Source: Heterodontus francisci (Eukaryota). Taken from it: a stretch of DNA of 64,000 bases. The stretch covers positions 16,340,945-16,404,944 of the forward strand of contig NC_090416.1 of assembly GCF_036365525.1 (NCBI RefSeq). Reading direction: 5' to 3'. Below are positions 1 to 55,076 of this stretch, in pieces. Below the pieces are notes generated by a model that was not told the origin of the DNA, did not search any database, and worked only from the letters and a program-made list of their open reading frames with translations. Numbering within the stretch: the first letter of the stretch is position 1; every line of letters starts with the position of its first letter. The translations under genes were made by a program, and so were the position numbers.

Positions 1-129
1 GCCCAAAAGAAAATTCCTCTAATCGCCATTATTCGTACAGTTAACCACTGACTTGCACCAATATCCACCTCAACTCACCCCCACCCCCTCCCCACAAAAA
101 ATAACAGAGCAATTTGAATTCATGTCATC

Positions 130-135
130 TTTATT
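130..135 (-). terminator. PolyA signal AATAAA of IgL cluster 1
   Basis: + strand tttatt about 330 nt downstream of the C stop codon. Conserved at 16442-16447, 33158-33163 and 49505-49510. Confidence 0.7.
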
Positions 136-464
136 AAAACAGCCACACACAGAGAGATACATTTTTCAATTCTAACAAATGGTACTACTGAGAGAAAGGA
201 GAGAGGGAGCAGAACCCATCCAGCTCCAAATGGGAATGTACTCCCGGGATAGGTGGTCCTGATATTCACTGTCACCCACCTGCGCCCCCCAGTTAAAATT
301 GGATCCAAAATTGGATCGTTAAACTGCGATTGAAGTGACTGTTTCAACATCGTTGGCCACATTTGCTACAGTGATTACATTGCAAAACAACAACAACAAC
401 ATTCCACATATTGAATAATATTTCATCAGCAATAAATCAAACTCTAAACCCCAGTTGCTCCCTC

Positions 465-793
465 TCAGTCGGAACAAGCGGTGGAGCTGATGGTTTTGAG
501 GAGAGGTGAGCTCAGAGAGCCGTGGTCCACACTGCAGGTATAGCTGGAGCCCTTATTCCAGGCAGTGGCGGGGACTCTCAGGTAACTGCTCAGGCTGTAG
601 GTTTGATCACTGTCCGTGGACACAGTGCCTGTGGTCACCCCGCTGTCTGTCTCTTTATCATCCACTCTCCAGAGAACCCGCACGAAACCCGGCTTAAAGC
701 GGCTCACCAGGCAGGACAGAGTAGCCCATCCGGAGTCTATTTCTTCCGAGGAAGGAGGGAGCAGGAGAACTGATGGTTTCCGATCCTCACTAC
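465..793 (-). CDS. IGL: Ig light chain constant exon, cluster 1 (type I / sigma-cart-like)
   Basis: Acceptor cacacag|GT AGT GAG, phase 1. Translates (S)SEDRKPSVLLLPPSSEEIDSGWATLSCLVSRFKPGFVRVLWRVDD...YSLSSYL...YTCSVDHGSLSSPLLKTISSTACSD*. C1-set Cys/Trp/Cys motifs and a near-terminal Cys for the H-L disulfide. Confidence 0.96.
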
Positions 794-1799
794 CTGTGTG
801 TGAGAGACAGGGTGGAAGAAAGGAATCTCACTGTTAGTATCAATCATTTTTTCTAAAAGGCATATCCAGAATTAGTAACACATACTATAATTTAAAACAA
901 ACATTTAACTTGACTTCAGACTTAGGTAGAGACAGTAAATAATACAATAGCCTGAGTGTTTCCAGCACTCGATTTCAGATTTCCAGCATCTGCAGGATTT
1001 TGCTTTGATTGGATTAAAATTAAATATTTAGTCCAATCTTAACTCCCTGTCAATTGAGAGCTGGACTTGTACATGGATTCGAGACATTCAATATAAATTA
1101 ATTAACTGAATATTAAATACAACAGACAATATCGAATTGTTTAAAATTCAGGGGCAGATTAAAATCAAAAGTTTAAAAATTGAGGAAGTTTCACATTTCG
1201 GATAGGCTGTACTGGAGGTCTTATGGAGGTGCTCGGAGTATGTATTGGGAGTAACTCAACCTCCCAGATCCACACTCAGAGTTCGGTGATCACCTCACCA
1301 GGAAAAATTCTTTATTTATAAAAAAAAGTTTTAAAAGTAATAAAGTTCGGGGCGGTTTCCATTTAGAAAGTAGGTTAGACACTTCACATGAACGAACGAC
1401 AGCCGGAAGGAGGGGGCTGGGAAGGGAGACGGGGACTGGGGGGTAGAGAGACCGGGTGCGTTAGGAACAGACAAGATGGGGTGGGGGGGCGCAGAATGAG
1501 GCCATTCGGTCCATCGAGTCCCTGCCGCTGCCTAACCCCACTTCCCAACTTTGGGAGTCTTTTTTTGAGGTGGGGGAGGGGGTGCTAGTGTCAAACTCGA
1601 CCCCATTTGACTCTGAGTAAAATTCCTGTTTGTAAATCTTCCAGCAACACCCGGGGCAGGCTCGCTATTTATACAACAGTGCAGCGAATAGACGGAGAAG
1701 TCCACACCTGCACACTGCAGACCTGGCCGAACAGACTCGAGGGGCTGAATGGCCTTTCTCCCCTGTTCATTCTGCATTTTCTTTTGCCAATGTAGTTTT

Positions 1800-1950
1800 T
1801 CCTCGGTTCTGAGGAAAGGTCAGAGACCCGAAACTGTTCACCGTTTCTCCCTCTCTCTCCGCAGAGGCTGCCCAGACCTGCTGAGTATTTCCAGCATCTT
1901 CTGTTTTTTTTATTTCAGATTTCCAGCATCCGCAATTGTTTTGCTGCTAT
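1800..1950 (+). mobile_element. Penelope-like terminal-repeat fragment in the J-C intron (present in all units)
   Basis: ctgagga...ggtc-aga-gacc-cgaaac followed by gacctgctgagtatttccagcatc...atttcagatttccagcatc, which I recognise as a common shark interspersed repeat. A partial second copy lies near 950-1010. Confidence 0.5.
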
Positions 1951-2127
1951 TTTAGTGTTTATTTTTCTACCCTCCAGAATCCAAATTCCCAGCACTGAAT
2001 CAGTGGACAGAAAAATAAAAATCTGACCCAATTTGTTTTCACCGTTATCAGGGCAGATCCGATTCTGCAACAATAAATGAATAAATAATTGAAACAATAT
2101 GAATGATAGGATGAGGGAATTACTTAC

Positions 2128-2164
2128 TCTGTAAACTCAGGGCGGTCCCAGGTCCGAAGGTAAA
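2128..2164 (-). CDS. IGL: Ig light chain J segment, cluster 1 (FTFGPGTALSLQ)
   Basis: FGxGT motif, donor A|gtaagt, preceded by an RSS heptamer. Its phase matches the C exon. Confidence 0.95.
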
Positions 2165-2203
2165 CACAGTGCAGCGTTTTAATGGGACGGGTCACTTAAA
2201 ACC
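2165..2203 (+). promoter_or_regulatory. J recombination signal sequence, 23-bp spacer (CACAGTG-23-CTTAAAACC)
   Basis: Perfect heptamer abutting J, with a 6/9 nonamer at exactly 23 bp. Confidence 0.9.
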
Positions 2204-2518
2204 CAGGCTGGGAAGAAAGAGGGGAAAATATTAATAATCTGTCCTTTATCACATTCCCTTTCACATTCTGCCTTTCACTGGGGCCGGAATGCTGAGAGTC
2301 TGGAGAAGGATTTTCACATATCAGTGAGGAAACCCTGAGAATATCAGTGTTTACCTACCCAGCGAATAGTCCAAATATTGGGGAAAATCCAAATAAACCC
2401 ATGGAATTCCAGTGAGATTTTCCACAAGTTACATAAGGAATATTTCTGAAGCTCATCACACAGTCTCAGGCAGGAATATTTCAGTAGCTGTTGGAATTCT
2501 GAGTGGTTCTGTTGGTGC

Positions 2519-2546
2519 AGTTTTTGTATTGCCCTGTCTCACTGTG
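2519..2546 (-). promoter_or_regulatory. V recombination signal sequence, 12-bp spacer (CACAGTG-12-ACAAAAACT)
   Basis: Perfect heptamer and 8/9 nonamer at exactly 12 bp. Confidence 0.95.
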
Positions 2547-2874
2547 TATGTAGCTGCTGAGCCATCGTTGGCAGCACAGTAATAGACGGCGGAGTCTCCC
2601 GGTTCCAAGCTGCCGATGGTCAGAATGTGACTGTTACTGGAGGTGTCTCTGGAAGGTTTAAAACGGTCCGTGAAGCCGGTGCCTCGATAGATGCTACCAC
2701 TTGTATAGTGGGCTAACACCCACACCGGAGCCTCCCCGGGTCTCTGTCGGTACCAGTACATGTAGTAACTGCCCACATTGCCGTTCTGCATCGCACACTT
2801 TAACTCGGAGGTCTCACCGGCGGAGACTGGGTCTGAAATTGGGGTCTGATTGAGGACAGGAACCGCCAGGACAC
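2547..2874 (-). CDS. IGL: Ig light chain V exon, cluster 1 (germline, unrearranged)
   Basis: Acceptor ttgaag|GT GTC. Translates GVLAVPVLNQTP...ELKC...WYRQRPG...DRFKPSRDTSSNSHILTIGSLEPGDSAVYYCAANDGSAAT with no stops, followed by a 12-RSS. Confidence 0.96.
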
Positions 2875-3036
2875 CTTCAACACAAAACACAAGAGAGAGA
2901 AAAACACATTCAGTATATTGGAGCAAAAAAACACACTGATAAATAAACAGGCCGGGCTACCAAATCCCTTTGCTTCCTAATCTAATGGTTTACAAATGAA
3001 TAATTGAGTAACGTTCTGTTAACATAAGTCTCTCAC

Positions 3037-3085
3037 CTGTTAAATGGAGTAGCAGGGTCCCCAGGAGATACATTACTGCAGCCAT
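3037..3085 (-). CDS. IGL: Ig light chain leader exon, cluster 1 (MAAVMYLLGTLLLHLT-G)
   Basis: ATG, hydrophobic signal peptide, 49 nt, donor G|gtgaga, phase 1 matching the V exon. Confidence 0.92.
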
Positions 3086-3190
3086 TCCCTCCGGGGGGGA
3101 AAAAAACCCGTGAAGAATTAGTGAGCAGGGTTTTACTGTAACTCCAGAAAGTGGATCCAGTTACAGTGCCGGACAAGGTGAGACCAGTAT

Positions 3191-3330
3191 CTATTATATG
3201 AACCTGTATGCAAATACAGGGAGGGTTGAGAGGAGCAGGGGCGGCGGGGGGTTGGGGGGGGGGGGTGGGTGGGGGGGGGGGGGGGGTGGACCAGACCAGA
3301 TTTTTTTTATTGAGCCTCTATTGGTCCCCA
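3191..3330 (-). promoter_or_regulatory. IgL V promoter, cluster 1: TATA-like (TATAATA about 3192-3198), octamer ATTTGCAT (3208-3215), C-rich tract, CCAAT (about 3320-3324)
   Basis: Octamer in the light-chain orientation about 125 bp upstream of the leader ATG. Confidence 0.85.
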
Positions 3331-4149
3331 ATTAAACATTTCCATGTATTTATTTCCACCGAGTTGAGGGTTAATTCACAATAATTTCTGATTTTAACCC
3401 CTCCTTCTCATGTCAAGAGTGTGAGATTTAAAAGAACAACTGTAGAAATTGCACATTTTATCCCAGATGGTCAAAGACAAAAGCCCTTCAGAATCCAGTG
3501 CCTTGAATTCATCCAGAACAAGTTTAACCCAGCGATCGTTAAGGATTTGTTTTTTTTTATATTTGGGTCTGCAATGTGTACTTAAACACATATCTTTATA
3601 TCCAACACGCTGGTGTTTGAAACAAAGCAGTTCATTGGAAGGATTGGAATGGAAGAGATTGACTGGACTGCTTCTCTGAGCTGCTCTTTTTTCCTATCCG
3701 CCACTGTACAAGTGCACTGCTTGTCCTGGCGTTTGAGCCGAGTGTCGGGTCAAAACACTCGTTTCTCACTCAGGCCGACGTTCAGAAACAGCCAGAATCA
3801 ACTCCAATATCCGTTTTAATTGGTAATGCAACGAGGAGTGAGATTCTGACCGGGCAAGCTGACTGCTCGGCTAGTTTCTGTGTTGTGTCCGGATCCTGTG
3901 TTAAGTCCAGTTTCAATGAAATGTGTTTTCCTGCTGCAACAGTTCCTGCCCTGACTTTTTTTTGTTGCAACTAAACCACATGTATCGGAACCTCAGTCCC
4001 AGGCATACATTTGTTTTAACATTCCATTTCAGATGTTTTATGTCAATCACTCGATGCCAAGGGAAAACTTGCAACAAGTTGCTCGTGAGAGGAGTTAGTT
4101 TCTTTAAAATGAATATTTTCTATCTTTTTATTTAAAATTCACTTAATTG

Positions 4150-4915
4150 GATGTGGACATCACTTGGCCCTGCCCGCATTTATTGCCCATCCCTCATTGC
4201 CGTTGAGGGCGGCACAGTGGCGCAGTGGTTAGCATTACAGCCTCACAGCTCCACGAACCCGGGTTCGATTCCGGGTACTGCCTGTGTGGAGTTTGCAAGT
4301 TCTCCCTGTGTCTGCGTGGGTTTTCTCCGGGTGCTCCGGTTTCCTCCCACAAGCCAAAAGACTTGCAGGTTGATAGGTAAATTGGCCATTATAAATTGTC
4401 ACTAATATAGGTAGGTGGTAGGGTAATATAGGGACAGGTGGGGATGTTTGGTGGGAATATGGGATTAGTGTAGGATTAGTATAAATGGGTGGTTGATGTT
4501 CGGCACAGACTCGGTGGGCCGAAGGGACTGTTTCATTGCTGCATCTCTAATCTAATCTAAAGGTGGTGGTGGAGTCGCCTTCTTGAACTGCTACAGTGCA
4601 GTGGTTTTTGTACAACAGAACTGAGGGCAGTTAAGAGTCAACCACATTGCCGTGGGTCTGGAGTCACATGTCGGCCAGACCAGGTGAGGACGGCAGATTT
4701 CCTTCCCTAAAAGGACATTTGTGAAACAGATGGTTTTTTGTTAATGAACATTCAATTTATGGTCACCATTACTGAGACTAGGTTTCAATTCCAATTTTTC
4801 TTTTAATTAATTAGTTGAATTTAAATTCCATGGTGGGATTTGAACTCGTGTCTCCAGAGCATTATCCTGGGCCTCTGGATTAGTAATATCTAGTGCCATA
4901 ACTACTACGCCACCT
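4150..4915 (-). mobile_element. tRNA-derived SINE (minus strand), interrupted by the V-SINE
   Basis: The reverse complement of 4830-4912 has A-box/B-box-like features (...agttcaaatcccacc). The LINE-type tail gggatgggcaataaatgc lies at about 4175-4192. Uninterrupted in unit 2 (about 20460-20885). Confidence 0.55.
4207..4560 (+). mobile_element. V-SINE (HE1-like), unit 1
   Basis: tRNA head (gtggcgcagtggttagc; ggttcgattcc), V-domain gtgtggagtttgca...gggtgctccggtttcctcccac, and LINE-derived tail gggccgaaggg...(tctaa)n. Confidence 0.85.
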
Positions 4916-4934
4916 TGTGATGGATCAATATTAA

Positions 4935-5290
4935 TTCTAGAAATGTGATAGGATTTGAGCCAGTGAAAGGGAGAGGGTGGGAAGAAGAACAGCAGGGAAG
5001 GTCTGTGACAGGGGTGGAGGGCAGGAGAGATTAAATGACAAAAAGGGTGTCAAGGTGCAAAGCCAAAGGGAGTGGTAATAAAAGATGTGTCTGGAGGAGA
5101 TGTGAATGGCAGGATCGGAACACAAAGTAAAGGAAATAAGAGGTAAACAAGAGAGATAAAATAACAAATCAGCAAAGAAAAGGGCAACAAAAATGAGGGC
5201 AGGGGGGTTACAAACTAAAATTGTAGAATTCAGTGTTGAGTCCGGAAGGTTGTAGAGTGCCCAGTCGAAAGATGAGGTGCTGTTCCTGCA
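4935..5290 (-). mobile_element. Penelope-like element 3' fragment (GIY-YIG C-terminus plus 3' flank); also near 20903-21258, 37972-38340, 54296-54650
   Basis: The minus strand from 5288 translates QEQHLIFRLGTLQPSGLNTEFYNFSL*, resembling the C-terminal motif of the Penelope endonuclease. Confidence 0.65.
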
Positions 5291-5540
5291 GTTAGCCTCC
5301 GATTACTGACATGTTCAGTCAAGTCAGTGTCGACTAGCTGCCCCCTAGACAGAGAATTTCACCCCTCCCCCATTCAAAATCCATTTCTGATTGGTCTCCA
5401 CAGCAGAAACAGACCCACCTCCCTCCCCTCCCACCAGGCAGATTCTCTGGGTCATTTTCAACTAACCCTAACCTGCATTACTATAGAGACCTCAGGATGT
5501 CCTAAAGACAGACAAATAAACACCTGTTTTGAAGTTTTGT

Positions 5541-5655
5541 CATTGTAACATCGTAATAAAGTGTTTTCCCCTGCTCCCCTTGACCCCCTCCCTGTATTTG
5601 CATATTGACTAATATATAGATACTAGTCTTCTCCGGGTTCCCGGAGTTACAGTAA
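5541..5655 (+). promoter_or_regulatory. Inverted paralogue of the IgL V promoter, unit 1 (octamer 5596-5603; 61-bp upstream deletion)
   Basis: 5586-5604 is the exact reverse complement of 3207-3225. Further blocks align: cccctgctcc, tagatact(a/g)gtct and ggagttacagtaa. Confidence 0.75.
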
Positions 5656-5714
5656 TATTGTTGAAGTGAAAGCACAATTGCTAAATGTGTGAGAAGCTGA
5701 ACTCAGCTTTGCCC

Positions 5715-5835
5715 ATGTAGTTGAATGGAGAGTGCACATATGTAGTTAAATGGAGTCATCCTCGTATGTAGTTAAATGGAGTCATCCGCGTATGTAGTTA
5801 AATGGAGTCATCCACGTATGTAGTTAAATGGAGTG
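5715..5835 (+). repeat. About 26-bp tandem repeat (atgtagttaaatggagtcatccacgt)
   Basis: About 5 imperfect copies in unit 1 and about 4 in the other units. Confidence 0.8.
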
Positions 5836-6094
5836 TGCCAGTGTGCAGTAAAATGGGGTTGTGCACATGTCTAATGGAAAGCAGTTCAGCACCTCTAGGT
5901 TCATAGAATCTCTCACTTTGCACAGCAGATGTCACATGGCTGCAGCTTTGCCCAGGGAGCCTACCCGGTTCACACAGGATAGGCCAGGTGTTAAAGCAAG
6001 AGCATTTGGTGTTGCCTATTGAAGCTTGCACAGCGGTTAAAGGAAAATACAATTAAAGCTCACAAGATGGGAATCTTGTAAAGTGTCAGCCATG

Positions 6095-6635
6095 GCCTCG
6101 TGGCTTCAAGTCACAATCCAGAGACTTGAGCACAAAAAGCAGTCTCACATTCGCCGTGTAGTACTGAGGGAGTGCTGCACTGTCAAAGGGTCAGTACTGA
6201 GTGAGTGCCGCACTCAGAGGGTCAGTACTGAGGGAGTGCTGCATTGTCAGAGGGTCAGTCCTGAGGGAGCGCTGAACTGTTGGAGGGTCAGTACTGAGGG
6301 AGTGCTGAACTGTTGGAGGGTCAGTACTGAGGGAGTGCTGCACTGTCGGAGGGTCAGTACTGAGGGAGTGCTGCACTGTCTGAGGTGCCATATTCACAAG
6401 TCCCCCTCAGGTGGACATTATCGATCCCATGACTCTATTTGAAGGAGAGCAGGTGCCCTGGACAATATATATTCCAACATTAACACCTAAAGCTGTAACT
6501 GGTCATTATCACATTGCTATTTGTGGGAGCTTGCTGTGTAAATGACTGTCAGATTTCCTGCATTTCAACAGTGACTACATTTCAAAACACACTTCAAAAG
6601 TACGTCATTAGATGTAAACCACTTTGGGGCAGCCT
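6095..6635 (+). mobile_element. DeuSINE (SacSINE1/AmnSINE1-like) with an internal 30-bp minisatellite, unit 1
   Basis: ttcaagtc..tccagagacttgagcac..gtactgagggagtgctgcactgtc..ctcaggtggac..ctggtcattatcacattgct..gtgggagcttgctgtg..caacagtgactac..cttcaaaagtac matches the Deu-domain SINE as I recall it. Confidence 0.75.
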
Positions 6636-16776: not shown

Positions 16777-17105
16777 TCAGTCGGAACAAGCGGTGGAGCT
16801 GATGGTTTTGAGGAGAGGTGAGCTCAGAGAGCCGTGGTCCACACTGCAGGTATAGCTGGAGCCCTTATTCCAGGCAGTGGCGGGGACTCTCAGGTAACTG
16901 CTCAGGCTGTAGGTTTGATCACTGTCCGTGGACACAGTGCCTGTGGTCACCCCGCTGTCTGTCTCTTTATCATCCACTCTCCAGAGAACCCGCACGAAAC
17001 CCGGCTTAAAGCGGCTCACCAGGCAGGACAGAGTAGCCCATCCCGAGTCTATTTCTTCCGAGGAAGGAGGGAGCAGGAGAACTGATGGTTTCCGATCCTC
17101 ACTAC
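16777..17105 (-). CDS. IGL: Ig light chain constant exon, cluster 2
   Basis: Same acceptor and protein as cluster 1. Confidence 0.96.
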
Positions 17106-18452
17106 CTGTGTGTGAGAGACAGGGTGGAAGAAAGGAATCTCACTGTTAGTATCAATCATTTTTTCTAAAAGGCACATCCAGAATTAGTAACACATACTAT
17201 AATTTAAAACAAACATTTAACTTGACTTCAGACTTAGGTAGAGACAGTAAATAATACAATAGCCTGAGTGTTTCCAGCACTCGATTTCAGATTTCCAGCA
17301 TCTGCAGGATTTTGCTTTGATTGGATTAAAATTAAATATTTAGTCCAATCTTAACTCCCTGTCAATTGAGAGCTGGACTTGTACATGGATTCGAGACATT
17401 CAATATAAATTAATTAACTGAATATTAAATACAACAGACAATATCGAATTGTTTAAAATTCAGGGGCAGATTAAAATCAAAAGTTTAAAAATTGAGGAAG
17501 TTTCACATTTCGGATAGGCTGTACTGGAGGTCTTATGGAGGTGCTCGGAGTATGTATTGGGAGTAACTCAACCTCCCAGATCCACACTCAGAGTTCGGTG
17601 ATCACCTCACCAGGAAAAATTCTTTATTTATAAAAAAAGAGTTTTAAAAGTAATAAAGTTCGGGGCGGTTTCCATTTAGAAAGTAGGTTAGACACTTCAC
17701 ATGAACGAACGACAGTCGGAAGGAGGGGGCTGGGAAGGGAGACGGGGGGTCGTGGGTAGAGGGACCGGGTGCGTTAGGAACAGACAAGATGGGGGCGGGG
17801 GGGGGGGGGGGGGGCGCAGAATGAGGCCATTCGGTCCATCGAGTCCGTGCCGCAGCCTAACCCACTTCCCAACTTTGGGAGTCTTTTTTTGAGGTGGGGG
17901 GAGGGGGTGCTAGTGTCAAACTCGACCCCCTTTGAGTGTGAGTAAAATTCCTGTTTGTAAATCTTCCAGCAACACCCGGGCAGGCTCGCTATTTATACAA
18001 CAGTGCAGCGAATAGACGGAGAAGTCCACACCTGCACACTGCAGACCTGGCCGAACAGACTCGAGGGGCTGAATGGCCTTTCTCCCCTTTTCATTCTGCA
18101 TTTTTATTTTGCCAATGGAGTTTTTCCTCGGTTCTGAGGAAAGGTCAGAGACCCGAAACTGTTCACCGTTTCTCCCTCTCTCTCCGCAGAGGCTGCCCAC
18201 ATCTGCTGAGTATTTCCAGCATCTTCTGTTTTTTTTATTTCAGATTTCCAGCATCCGCAATTGTTTTGCTGCTATTTTAGTGTTTATTTTTCTACCCTCC
18301 AGAATCCAAATTCCCAGCACTGAATCAGTGGACAGAAAAATAAAAATCTGACCCAATTTTTTTTCACCGTTATCAGGGCAGATCCGATTCTGCAACAATA
18401 AATGAATAAATAATTGAAACAATATGAATGATAGGATGAAGGAATTACTTAC

Positions 18453-18489
18453 TCCGTAAACTCAGGGCGGTCCCAGGTCCGAAGGTAAA
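18453..18489 (-). CDS. IGL: Ig light chain J segment, cluster 2 (FTFGPGTALSLR)
   Basis: FGxGT motif, gtaagt donor, adjacent heptamer. Confidence 0.95.
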
Positions 18490-18528: not shown

Positions 18529-18842
18529 CAGGCTGGGAAGAAAGAGGGGAAATATTAATAATCTGTCCTTTATCACATTCCCTTTCACATTCTGCCTTTC
18601 ACAGGGGCCGGAATGCTGAGAGTCTGGAGAAAGATTTTCACATATCAGTGAGGAAACCTTGAGAATATCAGTGTTTACCTACCCAGCTAATAGTCCAAAT
18701 ATTGGGGAAAATCCAAATAAACCCATGGAAACCCAGTGAGATTTTCCACAAGTTACATAAGGAATATTTCTGAAACTCATCACACAGTCTCAGGCAGGAA
18801 TATTTCAGTAGCTGTTGGAATTCTGAGTGGTTCTGTTGATAC

Positions 18843-18870
18843 AGTTTTTGTATTGCCCTGTCTCACTGTG
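18843..18870 (-). promoter_or_regulatory. V 12-RSS, cluster 2
   Basis: CACAGTG-12-ACAAAAACT. Confidence 0.95.
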
Positions 18871-19198
18871 TATGTAGCTGCTGAGCCATCCCCGGCAGCA
18901 CAGTAATAGACGGCGGAGTCTCCCGGTTCCAAGCTGCCGATGGTCAGAATGTGACTGTTACTGGAGGTGTCTCTGGAAGGTTTAAAACGGTCCGTGAAGC
19001 CGGTGCCTCGATAGATGCTACCACTTGGATAGTGCTCTAACACCCACACCGGAGCCTCCCCGGGTCTCTGTCGGTACCAGCTCATGTAGTAACTGCCCAC
19101 ATTGCCGTTCTGCATCGCACACTTTAACTCGGAGGTCTCACCGGTGGAGACTGGGTCTGAAATTGGGGTCTGATTGAGGACAGGAACCGCCAGGATAC
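18871..19198 (-). CDS. IGL: Ig light chain V exon, cluster 2
   Basis: Open V domain ending YYCAAGDGSAAT. CDR2 region LEHYPSGS. Confidence 0.96.
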
Positions 19199-19361
19199 CT
19201 TCAACACAAAACACAAGAGAGAGGAAAACACATTCAGTTTATTGGAGCAAAAAAAGCACACTGAGAAATAAACAGGCCGGGCAACCAAATCCCTTTGCTT
19301 CCTAATCTAATGGTTTACAAATGAATAATTGAGTAACGTTCTGTTAACATAAGTCTCTCAC

Positions 19362-19410
19362 CTGTTAAATGGAGTAGCAGGGTCCCCAGGAGATACATTA
19401 CTGCAGCCAT
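19362..19410 (-). CDS. IGL: Ig light chain leader exon, cluster 2
   Basis: Same 49-nt leader and donor. Confidence 0.92.
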
Positions 19411-19515
19411 TCCCTCCGGGGGGGAAAAAAACCCGTGAAGAATTAGAGAGCAGGGTTTTACTGTAATTCCAGAAAGTGGATCCAGTTACAGTGCCGGACA
19501 AGGTGAGACCAGTAT

Positions 19516-19640
19516 CTATTATATGAACCTGTATGCAAATACAGGGAGGGTTGAGAGGAGCAGGGGCGGCGGGGGGGCGGGGGGGTGGGGGGAGGGGGAC
19601 TGGACCAGATTTTTTAATTTGAGCCTCTATTGGTCCCCAA
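19516..19640 (-). promoter_or_regulatory. IgL V promoter, cluster 2 (octamer 19533-19540)
   Basis: ATTTGCAT plus TATA-like and CCAAT elements. Confidence 0.85.
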
Positions 19641-21537
19641 TTAAACATTTCCATGTATTTATTTCCACCGAGTTGAGGGTTAATTCACAATAATTTCTGA
19701 TTTTAACCCCCCCTTCTCATGTCAAGAGTGTGAGATTTAAAAGAACAACTGTAGAAATTGCACATTTTATCCCAGATGGGCAAAGACAAAAGCCCTTCGG
19801 AATCCAGTGCCTTAAATTCATCCAGAACAAGTTTAACCCAGCGATCGTTAGGATTTGTTTTTTTTATATTTGGGTCTGCAATGTGTACTTAAACACATAT
19901 CTTTATATCCAACACGCTGGTGTTTGCAACAAAGCAGTTCATTGGAAGGATTGGAATGGAAGAGATTGACTGGACTGCTTCTCTCAGCTGCTCTTTTTTC
20001 CTATCCGCCACTGTGCAAGTGCACTGCTTGTCCTGGCGTTTGAGCCGAGTGTAGGGTCAAAACACTCGTTTCTCACTCAGGCCGACGTTCAGAAACAGCC
20101 AGAATCAACTCCAATATCCGTTTTAATTGGTAATGCAACGAGGAGTGAGATTCTGACCGGGCAAGCTGACTGCTCGGCTAGTTTCTGTGTTGTGTCCGGA
20201 TCCTGTGTTAAGTCCAGTTTCAATGAAATGTGTTTTCCTGCTGCAACAGTTCCTGCCCTGACTTTTTTGTTGTTGCAACTAAACCACATGTATCGGAACC
20301 TCAGTCCCAGGCTTACATTTGTTTTAACATTCCATTTCAGATGTTTTATGTCAATCACTCGATGCCAAGGGAAAACGTTCAACAAGTTGCCCGTGAGAGG
20401 AGTTAGTTTCTTTAAAATGAATATTTTCTATCTTTTTGTTTAAGTTCACTTCATGGGATATGGGCATCACTTGGCCCTGCCCGCATTTATTGTCCATCCC
20501 TCATTGCCGTTGAGATGGTGGTGGTGGAGCCGCCTTCTTGAACTGCAACAGTGCAGTGGTTTTTGTACAACAGAACGTCCATTTCTGAGGGCAGTTAAGA
20601 GTCAACCACGTCCCGTGGGTCTGGAGTCACATGTAGGCCAGACCAGGTGAGGACGGCAGATTTCCTTCCCTAAAAGGACATTTGTGAACCAGATGATTTT
20701 TTGTTAATGAACATTTAATGGTAGTTTTATGGTCACCATTACTGAGACTAGGTTTCAATTCCAATGTTTTATTGTTAATTAGTTGAATTTAAATTCCATG
20801 GTGGGATTTGAACACGTGTCTCCAGAGCGTTATCCTGGGCCTCTGGATTAGTAATATCTAGTGACATTACTACTACGCCACCTTGTGATGGATCAATATT
20901 AATTCTAGAAATGTGATAGGATTTGAGACAGTGAAAGGGAGAGTGTGGGAAGAAGAACAGCAGGGAAGGTCTGTGACACGGGTGGAGGGGAGGAGAGATT
21001 AAATGACAAAAAGTGTTTCAAGGTGCAAAGCCAAAGGGAGTGGTAATAAAAGATGTGTCTGGACGAGGTGTGAATGGCAGGTACTGAACACAAGGTAAAG
21101 GAAATAAGAGGTAAACAAGAGAGATAAAATAACAAATCAGCAAAAAAAAAGGGAAATAAAAATGAGGGCAGGGGGGTTACAAACTAAAATTGTAGAATTC
21201 AGTGTTGAGTCCGGAAGGCTGTAGAGTGCCCAGTCGAAAGATGAGGTGCTGTTCCTGGAGTTAGTCTCCTATTACTGACATGTTCAGTCAAGTCAGTGTC
21301 GACTAGCTGCCCCCTAGACAGAGAATTTGACCCCTCCCCCATTAAAAATCCGTTTCTGATTGGTCTCCACAGCAGAAACAGACCCACCTCCCTCCCCTCC
21401 CACCAGGCAGTTTCTCTGGGTCATTTTCAACTAAACCTAACCTGCATTACTATAGAGACCTCAGGGTGTCCTAAAGACAGACAAATAAACACCTGTTTTG
21501 AAGTCTGGTCATTGTAACATCGTAACCCAATGCACAA

Positions 21538-21685
21538 TGGAAATAAATATTTGGAAATGTTTACTCAGGGACAAATATATTTTTAATAAAGTGTTTTCCC
21601 CTGCTCCCCTTGACCCCCTCCCTGTATTTGCATATTGACTAATATGTAGATACTAGTCTTCTCCGGGTTCCCGGAGTCACAGTAA
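21538..21685 (+). promoter_or_regulatory. Inverted paralogue of the IgL V promoter, unit 2 (octamer 21626-21633)
   Basis: tggaaataaatatttggaaatgttt...cccctgctcc...ccctccctgtatttgcata aligns with the minus-strand promoter tggaaataaatacatggaaatgttt...cccctgctcc...ccctccctgtatttgcata. Confidence 0.78.
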
Positions 21686-22099
21686 TCTTGTTGAAGTGAA
21701 AGCACAATTGCTAAATGTGTGAGAAGCTGAACTCAGCTTTGCCCATGTAGTTGAATAGAGGGTGCACATATGTAGTTGAATAGAGTCATCCACGTATGTA
21801 GTTAAATGGAGTCATCCACGTATGTAGTTAAATGGAGTGTGCCAGTGTGTAGTAAAATGGGGTTGTGCACATGTCTAATGGAAAGCAGTTCAGCACCTCT
21901 AGGTTCATAGAATCTCTCACTTTGCACAGCAGATGTCACATGGCTGCAGCTTTGCCCAGGGAGCCTACCCGGTTCACACAGGATAGGCCAGGTGTTAAAG
22001 CAAGAGCATTTGGTGTTGCCTATTGAAGCTTGCACAGCGGTTAAAGGAAAATACAATTAAAGCTCACAAGATGGGAATCTTGTAAAGTGCCAGCCATGG

Positions 22100-23005
22100 C
22101 CTCGTGGGTTCAAGTCAAAATCCAGAGACTTGAGCACAAAAAACAGTCTCACATTCCCCGTGTCGTACTGAGGGAGCGCTGCACTGTCGGAGGGTCAGTA
22201 CTGAGGGAGTGCGGCACTGTCGGAGGGTCAGTACTGAGGGAGCGCTGCACTGTCGGAGGGTCAGTACTGAGGGAAAGCTGTATTGTCAGAGGGTCAGTAC
22301 TGAGGGAGTGCTGCACTGTCAGAGGGTCAGTACTGAGAGAGTGCTGCACTGTCGGAGGGTCAGTACTGAGGGAGTGCGGCACTGTCGGAGGTTCAGTACT
22401 GAGGGAGTGCCGCACTGTCAGAGGGTCAGTACTGAGGGAGTGCGGCACTGTCGGAGGGTCAGTACTGAGGGAGCGCTGCACTGTCGGAGGGTCAGTACTG
22501 AGGGAAAGCTGTATTGTCAGAGGGTCAGTACTGAGGGAGTGCTGCACTGTCAGAGGGTCAGTACTGAGAGAGTGCTGCACTGTCGGAGGGTCAGTACTGA
22601 GGGAGTGCGGCACTGTCGGAGGTTCAGTACTGAGGGAGTGCCGCACTGTCAGAGGGTCAGTACTGAGGGAGTGCTGCACTGTCTGAGGGTCAGTACTGAG
22701 AGAGTGCTGCACTGTCAGAGGGTCAGTACTGAGGGAGTGCTGCACTGTCTGAGGTGCTATCTTCACAAGTCCCCCTCAGGTGGACATTATCGATCCCATG
22801 ACTCTATTTGAAGGAGAGCAGGTGCCCTGGACAATATATATTCCAACATTAACACCGAAAACTGTAACTGGTCATTATCACATTGCTATTTCTGGGAGCT
22901 TGCTGTGTAAATGACTGTCAGATTTCCAGCATTTCAACAGTGACTACACTTCAAAACACACTTCAAAAGTACGTCATTGGATGTAAACCACTTTGGGGCT
23001 GCCTA
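22100..23005 (+). mobile_element. DeuSINE with expanded 30-bp minisatellite (about 20 copies), unit 2
   Basis: As in unit 1. The array spans about 22165-22755. Confidence 0.75.
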
Positions 23006-23601
23006 GGGATCAGACCTCTCTGTCTCTCCATCTGTCTATCTGTCTATGTATCTGACCACCCATCTATTTATCTATCTGTCTGTCTATCTATCTGTCCATA
23101 TCTATCTCTCTATCTATCTATCCGTCCNNNNNNNNNNNNNNNNNNNNNNNNNNNNNNNNNNNNNNNNNNNNNNNNNNNNNNNNNNNNNNNNNNNNNNNNN
23201 NNNNNNNNNNNNNNNNNNNNNNNNNNNNNNNNNNNNNNNNNNNNNNNNNNNNNNNNNNNNNNNNNNNNNNNNNNNNNNNNNNNNNNNNNNNNNNNNNNNN
23301 NNNNNNNNNNNNNNNNNNNNNNNNNNNNNNNNNATCTCTCCATNNNNNNNNNNNNNNNNNNNNNNNNNNNNNNNNNNNNNNNNNNNNNNNNNNNNNNNNN
23401 NNNNNNNNNNNNNNNNNNNNNNNNNNNNNNNNNNNNNNNNNNNNNNNNNNNNNNNNNNNNNNNNNNNNNNNNNNNNNNNNNNNNNNNNNNNNNNNNNNNN
23501 NNNNNNNNNNNNNNNNNNNNNNNNNNNNNNNNNNNNNNNNNNNNCATCTCTTGCTATCTGTCTATCTCTCTGTCTATCTATCGATCTATCTATCTGACTG
23601 A

Positions 23602-23647
<46 letters not shown>

Positions 23648-23649
23648 GT

Positions 23650-24395
23650 CTCGGAGGGCGGAGTTCCAGACCGAGAAGTCTAAAAAACTTACTTCGGGGA
23701 TTCTCGGACAGACTCGGAGGGCGGAATTAACCTCGGGGATTCTCGGACAGATTCGGCGGGCGGAGTTCACCTCGGGGATTCTGGGACAGACTCGGAGGGC
23801 GGAGTTAACCTCGGGGATTCTGGGACAGACTCGGAGGGCGGAGAGAACCTCGGGTATTCTCGGACAGACTCGGAGGGCGGAGTTAACCTCGGGGATTCTC
23901 GGACTGACTCGAAGGGCGCAGTTAACCTCGGGGATTCTCGGACAGACTCGGAGGGCGGAGTTAACCTCGGGGATTCTCGGACAGACTCGGAGGGCGGAGT
24001 TAACCTCGGGGATTCTGGGACAGACTCGGAGGGCGGAGAGAACCTCGGGTATTCTCGGACAGACTCGGAGGGCGGAGTTAACCTCGGGGATTCTCGGACT
24101 GACTCGAAGGGCGCAGTTAACCTCGGGGATTCTCGGACAGACTCGGAGGGCGGAGTTAACCTCGGGGATTCTCGGACTGACTCGGAGGGCGGAGTTAATC
24201 TCGGGGATTCTCGGACAGACTCGGAGGGCGGAGTTAACCTCGGGGATTCTCGGACAGACTCGGAGGGCGGAGTTGACCTCGGGGATTCTCGGACAGACTC
24301 GGAGGGCGGAGTTAATCTCGGGGATTTTCGGACAGACTCGGAGGGCGGAGTTAACCTCGGGGATTCTCGGACAGACTCGGAGGGCGGTGTTCACC
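23650..24395 (+). repeat. 39-bp CpG-rich minisatellite (about 18 copies)
   Basis: Same monomer. Confidence 0.95.
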
Positions 24396-24449
24396 TCGAT
24401 GGGTCGAAGGGCCTGTTTCAGTGCTGTATCTCTAAATAAAAAATAAAAA

Positions 24450-27400
24450 TAAATAAAATAATGTTTATAGTAGAAATCTAGCACGAGGGACCATATCGTT
24501 AATTATAACAATTTAGTAAGAATTTAATAAGTATTTATTTTATATTAATTAACTAATTAGTGATAGAAATGTCAGTTAAAGGGGTGAAGTGCTTCACCTG
24601 TGAGATGTGGGAAGTCCGTGACACTTCCAGCATTCCGGGCGACTCCGCCTGCAGGAAGTTTACCCAGTTGCAGCTCCTCACAGACCGCATGGATCGGTTG
24701 GAGCGGCAACTGGATGCACTTAGGAGCATGCAGGTGGCAGAAAGCATCACAGACAGGAGTTTTAGAGAAGTGGTTACACCCAATGTGCAGGCAGATAGAT
24801 GGGTGACCGCTAGAAGGTGCAGGCAGTCAGTGCAGGAATCCCCTGTGGCTATCCCCCTCTCTAACAAGTATACCGTTTTGGATACTGTTGGGGGGGGATG
24901 GCCTATCAGGGGAAAACAACAGCAGCAGCCAGAGCAGTGGCACCACGGCTGGCTCTGTTGTTCAGCAGGGAGGGACAAAGCGCAGAAGAGCAATAGTTAT
25001 AGGGGACTCTGTCGTCAATGGCACAGTTAGGCGCTTCTGTGGACGTGAAAGCGACTCCAGGATGGTATGTTGCCTACCTGGTGCCAGGGTCAATGATGTC
25101 TCTGAACGGACAGGGGGCATTCTGAAGGGCGAGGGTGAACAGCCAGAGGTTGTGGTACACATCGGTACCAATGACATAGGCAGGAAGAGTGATGAGGTCC
25201 TGCAGGGGGAGTTTAGGGAGTTAGGTAGAAAGTTAAAAAACAGGACCTCTAGGGTTGTAATCTCCAGATTAGTCCCTGTGCCACGTGCCAGAGAGGCTAG
25301 AAATAGGAAGATACTGCAGCTAAACACGTGGCTGAGCAGCTGGTGTCGAAGGGAGGGTTTCAGATATCTGGACCATTGGGCTCTCTTCAGGGACAGATGG
25401 GACCTGTACAAGAAGGACCGGTTGCATCTAAACTGGAGGGGCACTAATATCCTGGCTGCAAAGTTTGCTAGCGTCACTCGGGAGGGTTTCAACTAGTGTG
25501 GCAGGGGGATGGGAACCAGAGCAGTGGGACAGCTAGAAAAATAAATGAGGAGGACATAGTAAATAAGGCCAGAAAGACTAAGTGGAAGAGCAGGCAGGGA
25601 GATGTTGCTGAGCACAGCGGGACTGGTGCTCTGAAGTGCATTTTTTTCAATGCGAGAAGTATAACAGGTAAGGCAGATGAACTGAGAGCTTGGATTAGTA
25701 CTTGGAAATATGATGTTGTTGCTATTACAGAGACTTGATTGAGGGAAGGGCAGGATTGGCAGCTAAATGTTCCAGGCTTTAGAAGCTTCAGGCGGGATAG
25801 AGGGGGGTGTAAAAGGGATGGGGGAGTTGCATAACTGGTTCAGGAGAATATCACAGCTGTACTGCGGGAGGACACCTCAGAGAGGTCATGCAGCGAGGCA
25901 ATATGGGTGGAGCTCAGGAATAGGAAGGGTGCAGTCACGATGTTGGGGGTTTACTACAGGCCTCCCAACAGCCAGCGGGAGGTAGAGGAGCAGATATGTA
26001 GACAGATTTTGGAAAGATGTAAAGGTAACAGGGTTGTGGTGGTGGGTGATTTTAACTTCCCCTATATTGACTGGGACTCACTTAGTGCTAGGGGCTTGAA
26101 TGGGGCAGAATTTGTGAGGAGCATCCAGGAGGGCTTCTTGAAACAGTATGTAGATAGTCCAACTAGGGATAGGGCCATTCTGGACCTGGTATTGGGGAAT
26201 GAGCCCGGCCAGGCAGTCGAAGTTTCAGTGGGGGAACATTTCGGGAGCAGCGACCATAATTCCATAAGTTTTAAGATACTTGTGGATAAGGATAAGAGTA
26301 GTCCTCGGGTGAAGGTGCTAAATTGGGGGAAGGCTAATTATAACAATATTAGGCAGGAATTGAAGAATTTAGATTGGGGGCGGCTGTTTGAGGGTAAATC
26401 AACATCTGACATGTGGGAGTCTTTCAAACGTCAGCTGATTAGAATCCAGGACCAGCATGTTCCTGTGAGGAAGAAAGACAAGTTTGGCATGTTTCGGGAA
26501 ATTTGGATAACACTGGATATTGTGAGCCTAGTCGAAAAGAAAAAGGAAGCATTTGTAAGGGCTGGAAGGCTAGGAACAGACGAAGCACTTGAGGAATATA
26601 AAGACAGTGGGAAGGAACTTAAGCAAGGAGTTAGGAGGGCTAAAAGGGGTCTTAAAAAGTCATTGGCAAACAGGATTAATAAGAATCCAAAGGCTTTTTA
26701 TACATATATAAAGAGCAAGAGGGTAACCAGGGAAAGGGTTGGCCCACTCAAGGATAGAGAAGGGAATCTATGTGTGGAGCCAGAGGGAATGGGCGAGGTG
26801 CTAAATGAGTACTTTGCATCAGTATTCACCAAAGAGAAGGACTTGGTGGATGATGAGCCTAGGGAAGGGAGTGCAGATAGTCTCAGTCATCTCATTATCA
26901 AAAAGGAGGAGGTGTTGGGTGTCTTGCAAAGCATTAAGGTAGATAAGTCCCCAGGGCCTGATGGGATCTACCCTAGAATACTGAGGGAGGCAAGGGAAGA
27001 AATTGCTGGGGCTTGACAGAAATCTTTGCATCATCATTGGCTGCAGGTGAGGCCCAAGAGGACTGGAGAAAAGCTAATGTTGTTCCTTTGTTTAAGAAGG
27101 GTGGCAAGGATAATCCAGGAAATTATAGGCCGGTGAGCCTTACGTCAGTGGTAGGTAAATTATTAGGGAGGATTCTTCGGGACAGAATTTACTCCCATTT
27201 GGAAACAAACGAACTTATTAGCGAGAGACAGCATGGTTTTGTGCAGGGGATGTCATGTCTTACTAATTTGATTGAGTCTTTTGAGGAAGTGACGAAGATG
27301 ATTGATGAAGGAAGGGCAGTGGATGTTATCTATATGGACTTTATTAAAGCCTTTGAGAAGGTTCCGCGTGGCAGACTGGTACAAAAGGTGAAGTCACACG

Positions 27401-28262
27401 GGATCAGAGGTGAGCTGGCAAGATGGATACAGAACTGGCTCGGTCATAGAAGACAGAGGGTATCAGTGGAAGGGTGCTTTTCTGAATGGAGGGATGTGAC
27501 TAGTGGTGTTCCGCAGGGATGAGTGCTGAGGAGTATTGACAGACAGAGAAATCTGGGCGTATAGGTCCACAGGTCACTGAAAGTGGCAACGCAGGTGGAT
27601 AAGGTAGTCAAGAAGGCATACGGCATGCTTGCCATCATTGGTCGGGGCATAGAGTATAAAAATTGTCAAGTCATGTTGCAGCTGTACAGAACCTTAGTTA
27701 GGCCACACTTAGAATATTGCGTGCAATTCTGGTCGCCACACTACCAGAAGGACGTGGAGGCTTTGGAGAGGGTACAAAGGAGGTTTACGGATGCTGCCTG
27801 GTCTGGAGGGCATTAACTATGAGGAGAGGTTGGAAAAAGTCGGTTTGTTTTCACTGGAACGACGGAGGTGGAGGGGCGACATGATAGAGGTTTACAAAGT
27901 TATGAGCGGCATGGACAGAGTGGATAGTCAGAAGCTTTTTCCCAGGGTGGAAGAGTCAGTTACTAGGGGACATCGGTTTAAGGTGCGAGGGGCAAAGTTT
28001 AGAGGGGATGTGCGAGGCAAGTTTTTGACACAGAGGGTGGTGAGTGCCTGGAACTTGCTGCCAGGGGAGGTGGTGGAAGCAGATACGATAGCGACGTTTA
28101 AGAGACATCTTGACAAATACTTGAATAGGATGGGAATAGAGGGATACGGTCCCCAGAAGTGCAGAAGTTGTTAGTTTAGACAGGCATCAAGATCGGTGCA
28201 GGCTTGGAGGGTCGAATGGTCTGTTCCTGTGTGGTACTGTTCTTTGTTCTTGTTCTTTGTTC
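24450..28262 (+). mobile_element. CR1-clade LINE, unit 2 (258-bp deletion removing the RT catalytic motif)
   Basis: Same motifs as unit 1. Deletion junction gagtgctg|aggagtatt at 27528/27529. Confidence 0.93.
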
Positions 28263-38617: not shown

Positions 38618-38765
38618 TGGAAATAAATATTTGGAAATGATTAATTAGGGACAAATATATTTTTAATAAAGTGTTTTCCCCTGCTCCCCTTGACCCCCTC
38701 CCTGTATTTGCATATTGACTAATATATAGATACTAGTCTTCTCCGGGTTCCCGGAGTTACAGTAA
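38618..38765 (+). promoter_or_regulatory. Inverted paralogue of the IgL V promoter, unit 3 (octamer 38706-38713)
   Basis: Same alignment as in unit 2. Confidence 0.78.
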
Positions 38766-54928: not shown

Positions 54929-55076
54929 TGGAAATAAATATTTGGAAATGATTAATTAGGGACAAATATATTTTTAATAAAGTGTTTTCCCCTGCTCCCC
55001 TTGACCCCCTCCCTGTATTTGCATATTGACTAATATATAGATACTAGTCTTCTCCGGGTTCCCGGAGTTACAGTAA
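54929..55076 (+). promoter_or_regulatory. Inverted paralogue of the IgL V promoter, unit 4 (octamer 55017-55024)
   Basis: Same alignment as in unit 2. Confidence 0.78.

What the first reader, a model, noticed from the sequence alone, without database searches (positions are those of the whole stretch)
21538..21685. Inverted, diverged twin of the Ig V promoter upstream of every cluster, facing away from the V gene
Seen: read on the gene strand, the true promoter is tggaaataaatacatggaaatgtttaattggggaccaata...cccctgctcc..ccctccctgtATTTGCATacaggttcatataatagatactggtct...ggagttacagtaa. About 2.1-2.5 kb upstream, on the opposite strand, is tggaaataaatatttggaaatg(t/a)tta..agggacaaata...cccctgctcc..ccctccctgtATTTGCATattgactaatat(a/g)tagatactagtct...ggagt(t/c)acagtaa. 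The 19 bp around the octamer are identical (5586-5604 vs 3207-3225) while the flanks have diverged, and no V exon follows. Copies lie at 5541-5655, 21538-21685, 38618-38765 and 54929-55076. Known: ATTTGCAT binds Oct-1/Oct-2 with OBF-1 and drives B-cell Ig transcription. Inference: it is either the relic of a lost head-to-head V gene, or a retained B-cell divergent promoter/enhancer. Its transcript would run sense through the DeuSINE and the CR1 LINE and antisense toward the neighbouring cluster's C exon, and could control cluster accessibility.
Basis: partly seen in the sequence, partly recalled or inferred. Interest (0 to 1): 0.78.

Follow-up and report, generated by a model that had tools for sequence, protein, structure and literature searches.

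The report
Silent inverted copy of antibody promoter
Each horn shark antibody light-chain gene unit in this window carries, about 2 kb upstream, a short backwards copy of its own promoter that has no gene behind it and shows no RNA, so it is most likely an old duplication relic.

Summary
The window holds four tandem type I light-chain V-J-C clusters on the minus strand. Their C exon is 100% identical to a Heterodontus francisci protein. Each cluster has, 2.09-2.46 kb upstream of its V promoter and on the opposite strand, a roughly 150-165 nt copy of that promoter. The copy spans the distal block, a C-rich block, the octamer, the TATA box and the first part of the 5'UTR. Identity is 78-82% pairwise, with local score 58 against 16.4 +/- 2.2 in shuffles. 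Homology stops on both sides, and no leader, V or C relic lies on the plus strand.

In four RNA runs from one sample the V exon reaches depths of millions. Bins 21299-22080, which cover the twin and about 400 nt downstream, are empty. The twin is no better conserved among the four copies than its surroundings. One copy lost the distal block through a 61-bp deletion and one has a changed TATA. The 19-20 nt perfect run at the octamer is only marginally unusual (P 0.15 untargeted, 0.02-0.05 targeted).

Best reading: a promoter-only relic of an old inverted duplication, carried along when the 16.5-kb unit was amplified. An octamer-dependent enhancer role is not excluded.

The parts
21523..21685 (+). 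Twin of cluster 2 (the finding). It is an inverted partial copy of the V promoter, with the distal block at 21538-21577, the C-rich block, the octamer at 21626-21633, a TATA-like box carrying an A>G change, and a 5'UTR-like end at 21673-21685.
19458..19682 (-). True V promoter of cluster 2. It has the distal block, a long poly-C tract, the octamer at 19533-19540, the TATA box near 19516-19523, and the first part of the 5'UTR. The RNA contigs start within bin 19378-19490.
18874..19412 (-). Leader exon (ATG at 19410-19412), leader intron (19196-19358) and V exon (18874-19195) of cluster 2, ending in a 12-spacer RSS. It is expressed, spliced and V-J joined in RNA.
16780..17100 (-). C exon of cluster 2 (C1-set domain), 100% identical to the H. 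francisci protein P0002.
5541..5655 (+). Twin of cluster 1. The proximal half is intact (octamer at 5596-5603), but a 61-bp deletion removed the distal block.
38618..38765 (+). Twin of cluster 3, with the octamer at 38706-38713 and an intact TATA-like box.
54929..55076 (+). Twin of cluster 4, with the octamer at 55017-55024. It is identical to twin 3 over 148 nt.
21745..21868 (.). A 26-bp tandem repeat that begins 60 nt after the end of the twin's homology.
22165..22754 (.). A 33-bp minisatellite with 17.9 copies, downstream of the twin. From my own reading of the sequence it lies inside a SINE-like element whose tRNA-like head sits at about 22060-22160. No TE library was available to test this.
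   Evidence: ARAGORN found no tRNA
24560..28174 (+). LINE remnant with endonuclease and reverse-transcriptase ORFs, in the same direction as the twin.

Best explanation
The twin is a promoter-only relic. Long before the present tandem array formed, a short piece of a type I light-chain V gene was copied in inverted orientation about 2 kb upstream. That piece ran from about -190 to +35 of the transcription start. It either came without the gene body or lost it afterwards. Later the whole unit of about 16.5 kb (C-J-V-promoter, spacer, twin, satellites, LINE) was amplified in tandem, so every cluster now carries a twin. The twin still has a perfect octamer and, in three of four copies, a TATA-like box. 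It drives no stable transcript and is drifting. The homology, its limits, the absence of a gene, the absence of RNA and the relative age are shown. That it has no function is inferred.
For: 1. Homology is real but confined to twin 21523-21685 against V 19682-19458. Sequence on either side scores at noise level, 20-21 against shuffle means of 19.5-20.1. Only two significant HSPs appear under permissive blastn scoring.
2. No leader, V, J or C relic lies on the plus strand anywhere in the unmasked window. tblastn finds 4 V and 4 C hits, all on the minus strand, and the next best E is above 4.
3. RNA was examined in four runs from one sample and one study. They are shown to be RNA by leader-intron joints at 19195/19359 and by V-J joined loose ends. 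V-exon depth is up to 3.9 million. The promoter bins 19491-19716 are 0. Bins 21299-22080 are 0 in 4 of 4 runs, apart from depth 5.75 in one bin of X1. Intergenic DNA at 19717-20394 is detected at depth 14-70. Reads were accepted from 90% likeness, so paralogous clusters elsewhere in the genome would also have mapped.
4. Signs of decay are present. Twin 1 lost the distal block through a 61-bp deletion, and twin 2 has A>G in the TATA-like box.
5. Among the four copies the twin windows have 3-5 variable columns per 150, against a mean of about 8. Other non-coding windows have 1-4, so the twin does not stand out.
6. For relative age, K2P between twin and promoter is 0.37-0.43, against 0.03-0.05 among promoters and 0-0.035 among twins 2-4. 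The inversion therefore predates the amplification.
7. First-reader notes on other windows report the same twin 137-433 kb further along the array. These are unchecked, but they fit a twin that is part of the amplified unit.
Against: 1. The best-conserved stretch between twin and promoter is the 19-20 nt around the octamer. If the run is required to cover the octamer, P is 0.02-0.05. That is a weak hint of selective retention, although constraint on the V-promoter branch alone can produce it.
2. The proximal 100 nt of the twin has only 2 variable sites among four copies, fewer than the roughly 5 expected, which by my arithmetic is not significant.
3. Promoter and twin hold the only octamers in each 16.5-kb unit. 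If these clusters use an octamer-bearing enhancer, the twin is the only candidate in the window.
4. The RNA evidence comes from assembled contigs of one sample, with unknown tissues and no strand information. The tool itself warns that a hole proves nothing, and rare, unstable or stage-specific transcripts would be missed.
5. No other species or older paralogue could be compared.
Confidence: 0.6

Rival explanations
1. The twin is a promoter copy co-opted as an upstream, octamer-dependent enhancer or accessibility element of its own cluster. Oct factors plus their B-cell co-activator bind it and help open or activate the V promoter 2 kb away, without making a stable RNA.
For: The octamer and its 11 flanking bases are intact in 4 of 4 twins and identical to the V promoters. 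The run over the octamer is marginally longer than expected, P 0.02-0.05. No other octamer lies in the 16.5-kb unit. The changes seen, a distal-block deletion and a TATA change, hit parts an enhancer might not need. From recall rather than any call here: mammalian Ig enhancers carry octamers and have promoter-like activity.
Against: Conservation among the four copies does not exceed that of the surroundings. The untargeted run test gives P 0.15. The copies are only 0-3.5% diverged, so an intact octamer in each is expected by descent. No RNA was seen, although active enhancers usually give low bidirectional RNA. There are no chromatin or cross-species data.
Confidence: 0.25
2. The twin is an active divergent promoter, used only in a cell stage or tissue not sampled, such as developing B cells. 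Its non-coding transcript runs through the satellites and the LINE toward the next cluster's C exon and controls accessibility.
For: The octamer, a TATA-like box at the right spacing and a 5'UTR-like segment are retained.
Against: Contig depth over 21299-22080 is zero in 4 of 4 RNA runs, two of which carry millions-deep V transcripts. The TATA is changed in twin 2 and the distal block is deleted in twin 1. Tandem repeats begin 60 nt downstream.
Confidence: 0.08
3. The similarity is not a duplication of the promoter. It is either chance or convergence on the same motifs, or the two arms are terminal inverted repeats of a transposon that supplied the promoter.
For: The two arms face outward about 2.1-2.5 kb apart, as inverted repeats of an element would.
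Against: The alignment score is about 19 sd above the shuffles and is colinear over about 165 nt, including non-motif bases. I saw no target-site duplication at the outer ends when reading. The spacer holds a SINE-like insert and no transposase ORF.
Confidence: 0.03

Closest known systems
Immunoglobulin V-gene octamer/TATA promoter (light-chain orientation, ATTTGCAT on the coding strand)
   Same: The twin keeps the octamer, a C-rich tract just upstream, a TATA-like box about 20 nt downstream and the start of the 5'UTR, in the same order and spacing as the functional V promoter of the same cluster. An octamer upstream of the leader in shark light-chain genes is in print (passages of PMC2193156).
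   Different: No leader or V exon lies behind it and no RNA was seen from it. It points away from the cluster.
Solo or partial pseudogene relics left by segmental duplication in tandem gene arrays
   Same: The twin is a fragment of a gene copied with its regulatory part. It is older than the array's amplification, is present in every unit by descent, and is accumulating deletions and point changes.
   Different: Only the promoter is recognisable. That can follow simply from the functional partner being constrained, so that only one of the two branches has drifted. This is inference.
Bidirectional Ig V promoters and promoter-like Ig enhancers of mammals (recalled, not retrieved by any search here)
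   Same: These are octamer-bearing elements that can act in both orientations or at a distance.
   Different: They are single elements with starts within a few hundred nt, or intronic enhancers with sterile transcripts. Here two separate inverted copies lie 2.1-2.5 kb apart and the second is silent in the RNA examined.

Membership tests
Functional Ig V-gene promoter | Octamer ATTTGCAT with a TATA box about 20-30 nt downstream | tested here: met
   The octamer is intact in 4 of 4 twins. The TATA-like box is intact in 3 of 4 and carries A>G in twin 2.
Functional Ig V-gene promoter | Followed by a leader exon and a V exon | tested here: not met
   No V or C match lies on the plus strand. No significant alignment to the 5'UTR, leader, intron or V appears downstream. 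The only shared feature is a 10-mer at the leader start, which is within chance.
Functional Ig V-gene promoter | Initiates transcription in lymphoid tissue | tested here: not met
   Contig depth is 0 over 21299-22080 in 4 of 4 RNA runs that hold the V exon at depths up to 3.9 million. The data are contigs from one sample, so rare RNA is not excluded.
Bidirectional (divergent) promoter pair | Two opposite-strand starts sharing one regulatory region, usually less than 1 kb apart, both transcribed | tested here: not met
   The octamers are 2086-2459 nt apart. A SINE-like insert lies between them. The second side shows no RNA.
Octamer-dependent Ig enhancer | Binds Oct factors and raises transcription of a linked promoter independently of orientation | not testable with these tools
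   Only the motif is shown. No chromatin, binding or reporter data are available.
Neutral duplication relic | Evolves no more slowly than flanking non-coding DNA and tolerates disabling changes | tested here: inconclusive
   Twin windows have 3-5 variable columns per 150 against a mean of 8, and other windows have 1-4. There is a 61-bp deletion and a TATA change. The octamer run gives P 0.02-0.05 in the targeted test. Four young copies give little power.
Type I (sigma-cart) light-chain cluster of Heterodontus | V-J-C in one short cluster with V-set and C1-set domains, closest to named type I chains | tested here: met
   Pfam V-set scores 1.5e-13 and C1-set 2.1e-15. The C exon is 100% identical, and the V exon 93%, to H. 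francisci proteins. A hit is named 'type I immunoglobulin light chain' of Leucoraja. The equation of type I with sigma-cart is recalled.

The most novel reading that the evidence does not exclude
The twin is a promoter duplicate turned into the cluster's own upstream octamer enhancer or accessibility switch. This would be a regulatory module born by inverting a promoter, kept in every type I light-chain cluster of the array, and the first cis-element beyond the V promoter defined for a shark Ig cluster. It could bear on how one cluster among dozens is chosen for rearrangement and expression.
Probability: 0.2. Interest if true: 0.6.

Novelty: new member of a known kind. Interest (0 to 1): 0.3.

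Why it matters
If the twin is only a relic, it is an ordinary by-product of duplication. Its value is as a marker showing that the inversion came before the tandem amplification of the horn shark type I light-chain array. If instead its octamer is used, it would be a candidate for the unknown cis-control that lets shark B cells activate one small Ig cluster among many. That question is open and could be tested with ATAC-seq, CAGE and reporters. The evidence here favours the ordinary reading.

Tried and rejected
I looked for a V-gene relic behind the twin in several ways. Smith-Waterman alignment of 21686-22086 against the 5'UTR-to-RSS stretch scored 20 against a shuffle mean of 19.5. Permissive blastn over 21480-23127 gave only the two promoter HSPs. 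tblastn with the V and C exons over the whole window found nothing on the plus strand.

The 10-mer at the leader ATG also lies 254 nt downstream of every twin. The window has 8 hits, 4 at leaders and 4 downstream of twins. Alignments around it are at noise level: 27 and 60 of 300 shuffles, and 201 of 500 shuffles, reach the score. I leave it as a weak hint.

I looked for inverted homology of the spacer beyond the promoters and found none. No other copies of the spacer or twin lie elsewhere in the window, only the cluster-periodic ones.

Rfam at gathering thresholds over the whole window gave 0 matches. ARAGORN over 19400-24700 found 0 tRNAs, so the SINE labels rest on my own reading of the sequence.

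A metagenome scan for the twin/promoter core pattern gave 0 hits. A metagenome scan with a V-domain profile gave one distant locus, L001, at 37% identity over residues 10-52. Its source organism is unknown to me, it cannot bear on the twin, and I did not read, compare or search it further.

For the literature, searches found no paper describing an inverted promoter copy upstream of shark light-chain clusters. I saw only search listings, plus passages of PMC2193156 on the octamer of nurse shark NS4 genes. For PMC2192082 only the abstract and reference list are held. The 1989 horn shark light-chain gene paper was not in the searchable library. Supplementary files were not consulted and are closed.

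The transposon-arm idea was rejected, as set out under the rivals.

Full report
What the window is. The 64-kb window holds four tandem repeats of a unit of about 16.3-16.7 kb, at 92-98% identity. Each unit carries one immunoglobulin light-chain cluster on the minus strand.

In unit 2 the parts are as follows. The C exon is at 16780-17100 (Pfam C1-set, 2.1e-15). The J segment is near 18440-18480, with a 23-spacer signal. The V exon is at 18874-19195 (Pfam V-set, 1.5e-13), with a 12-spacer signal. The leader intron is at 19196-19358 and the leader ATG at 19410-19412.

A protein search with the ORF around the V exon alone gave Heterodontus francisci light chains as best hits, plus a skate chain named 'type I'. 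Compared exon by exon, the C exon is 100% and the V exon 93% identical to the H. francisci protein P0002. I did not build or search a joined V-J-C model. Notes of other agents also call this genome horn shark. Equating type I with sigma-cart is from recall.

The observation. ATTTGCAT occurs exactly eight times: four on the minus strand at the V promoters and four on the plus strand 2086-2459 nt upstream of them. Chance expectation is 2.23.

The plus-strand sites sit in a segment that aligns to the reverse complement of the V promoter. The shared parts, in order, are:
- a distal block that is itself a short internal repeat;
- a C-rich block;
- a 19-nt stretch including the octamer, invariant in 8 of 8 sequences;
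- a TATA-like box with the bases after it;
- a 13-nt piece of the 5'UTR.

The V promoter has in addition a long poly-C tract and about 25 nt near the start site that the twin lacks. Identity is 78-82% in pairwise alignment over 146 nt and about 70% in the eight-sequence alignment. The local score is 58 against 16.4 +/- 2.2 in shuffles, with 0 of 200 reaching it. blastn gives two colinear HSPs, twin 21523-21577 and 21598-21659, at E about 1e-8 and 1e-7.

Limits of the homology. Nothing upstream or downstream of the roughly 165-nt segment aligns, even with scoring suited to about 65% identity. tblastn with the V and C exons finds only the four V and four C exons on the minus strand, and no plus-strand relic anywhere in the unmasked window.

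The 10-mer that starts the leader, including the ATG, also lies 254 nt downstream of each twin. The window has eight hits, four at leaders and four downstream of twins. Alignment around it is at noise level. By my arithmetic a shared 10-mer between two stretches of this size is expected about 0.1 times, so this is at most a faint trace of a lost leader.

Sixty nt after the twin a 26-bp tandem repeat begins. It is followed by a 33-bp minisatellite, (TCTA)n runs around the masked N stretches, a 39-bp minisatellite, and a LINE remnant with endonuclease and reverse-transcriptase ORFs on the plus strand. I left the N stretches as they are.

Age. K2P distance between twin and promoter is 0.37-0.43. 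It is 0.03-0.05 among the four promoters and 0-0.035 among twins 2-4. The inversion is therefore roughly ten times older than the amplification of the unit, and each twin is there by descent. First-reader notes on other windows report the same twin 137, 222, 250 and 433 kb further along. These notes are unchecked and not followed up.

Is it under selection? Among the four copies, 150-column windows over the twin have 3-5 variable columns. The mean is about 8, and other non-coding windows have 1-4. Twin 1 has lost the whole distal block through a 61-bp deletion, and twin 2 has A>G in the TATA-like box.

Between twin and promoter, the longest perfect run is 20 nt in pairwise alignment, and 15% of shuffles of the match pattern reach it. 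If the run is required to cover the octamer, 2-5% reach it. This weak signal is expected in part even if the twin drifts freely. The octamer is constrained on the promoter side, so only one branch contributes changes there. The same argument explains why only the promoter piece is still recognisable. Where the functional partner is constrained the two copies differ by one neutral branch. In the flanks they differ by two. So there is no clear evidence of constraint, but four young copies give little power.

Is it transcribed? One search found four runs from one sample and one study, kept as assembled contigs. Laid on 18700-22080 at 90% likeness or more, they prove to be RNA. Many contigs skip the leader intron (19195 to 19359), and loose ends at 18874/18878 continue into J sequence, which marks V-J joined messages.

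Depths along the stretch are:
- V exon: 3.9 million, 3.5 million, 0.44 million and 0.011 million in X1 to X4;
- promoter bins 19491-19716: 0;
- spacer at 19717-20394: 14-70 in X1 and about 16-18, in its first three bins only, in X2;
- SINE-like element at 20395-20846: thousands to 120,000 in all four runs;
- bins 21299-22080, the twin and 400 nt downstream: 0 in all four runs, apart from depth 5.75 in one bin of X1.

Because reads of 90% likeness were accepted, twins of paralogous clusters would also have shown up. The limits are these. The data are contigs, not reads. There is one sample, the tissues are unknown and there is no strand information. The tool warns that a hole proves nothing. 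Within those limits there is no stable transcript from the twin at about 1e-5 of the V message level.

Reading. The best-supported account is a promoter-only relic of an old inverted duplication, carried along by the amplification of the unit. It is silent and drifting (confidence 0.6). The main rival is that the copy has been kept as an octamer-dependent enhancer or accessibility element (0.25). In its favour, promoter and twin hold the only octamers in each 16.5-kb unit, and the changes seen spare the octamer half. An active divergent promoter used only in unsampled cells is less likely (0.08). Chance similarity or transposon arms are very unlikely (0.03).

What is known. An octamer upstream of the leader in shark light-chain genes is in print (passages of PMC2193156). 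My searches found no description of an inverted promoter copy upstream of shark Ig clusters. The older horn shark gene papers are not in the searchable library, and for PMC2192082 only the abstract and references were readable. Supplements were closed.

What could not be done. Two metagenome scans gave nothing usable. The one distant locus fetched, L001, was not opened.

Verdict. The 'divergent promoter with a transcript' half is not. The enhancer possibility stays open. Interest is modest.

Noticed in passing
window 19717-20394: Low-depth RNA contigs lie just upstream of the V promoter: depth 14-70 across the stretch in X1, and about 16-18 in X2 up to about 20055 only. These are the two runs with the highest V expression, and X3 and X4 show 0 there. 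The contigs could be upstream antisense transcription from the true V promoter or read-through. Contigs give no strand.
   Followed up: no
window 20440-20870 (minus strand by my reading): A SINE-like element lies between promoter and twin. Contig depth is very high in all four RNA runs, up to about 120,000. Many contigs break at 20615 and 20674-20676, which suggests a conserved core of about 60 nt shared with many transcripts.
   Followed up: partly
window 5936, 21940, 39020, 55331 (+) and 3085, 19410, 36117, 52463 (-): The 10-mer at the leader start codon occurs eight times in the window: at the four leaders and about 254 nt downstream of each twin. Alignment around it is not significant. It may be a last trace of a lost leader, or chance.
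   Followed up: yes
window 4207-4562 against 20514-20517: Unit 2 lacks about 355 nt that units 1, 3 and 4 have in the promoter-twin spacer. This is why its octamers are 2086 nt apart rather than about 2400 nt.
   Followed up: partly
window 1-5556 against 5554-6386 and their counterparts: Identity between units is a mosaic. The gene-bearing part is 97-98% identical between units. The stretch from the twin onward is about 92-94% identical, with a break near the twin. This may reflect homogenisation of the gene part or different crossover histories.
   Followed up: no
window 18874-19195: RNA contigs show many alternative bases across the V exon, in dozens of contigs per site, and junctional variety at 18874-18878. 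This fits many expressed paralogous clusters and/or somatic mutation, and active V-J joining.
   Followed up: no
window 22165-22754 and 23694-24398: Two minisatellites, of 33 bp (17.9 copies) and 39 bp (18.1 copies), flank the masked N stretches. The N stretches themselves are bordered by (TCTA)n runs.
   Followed up: partly
window 19555-19606 and counterparts: The poly-C tract of the V promoter differs in length between the four units and is absent from the twins. The reads tool skipped it as a repeat.
   Followed up: no
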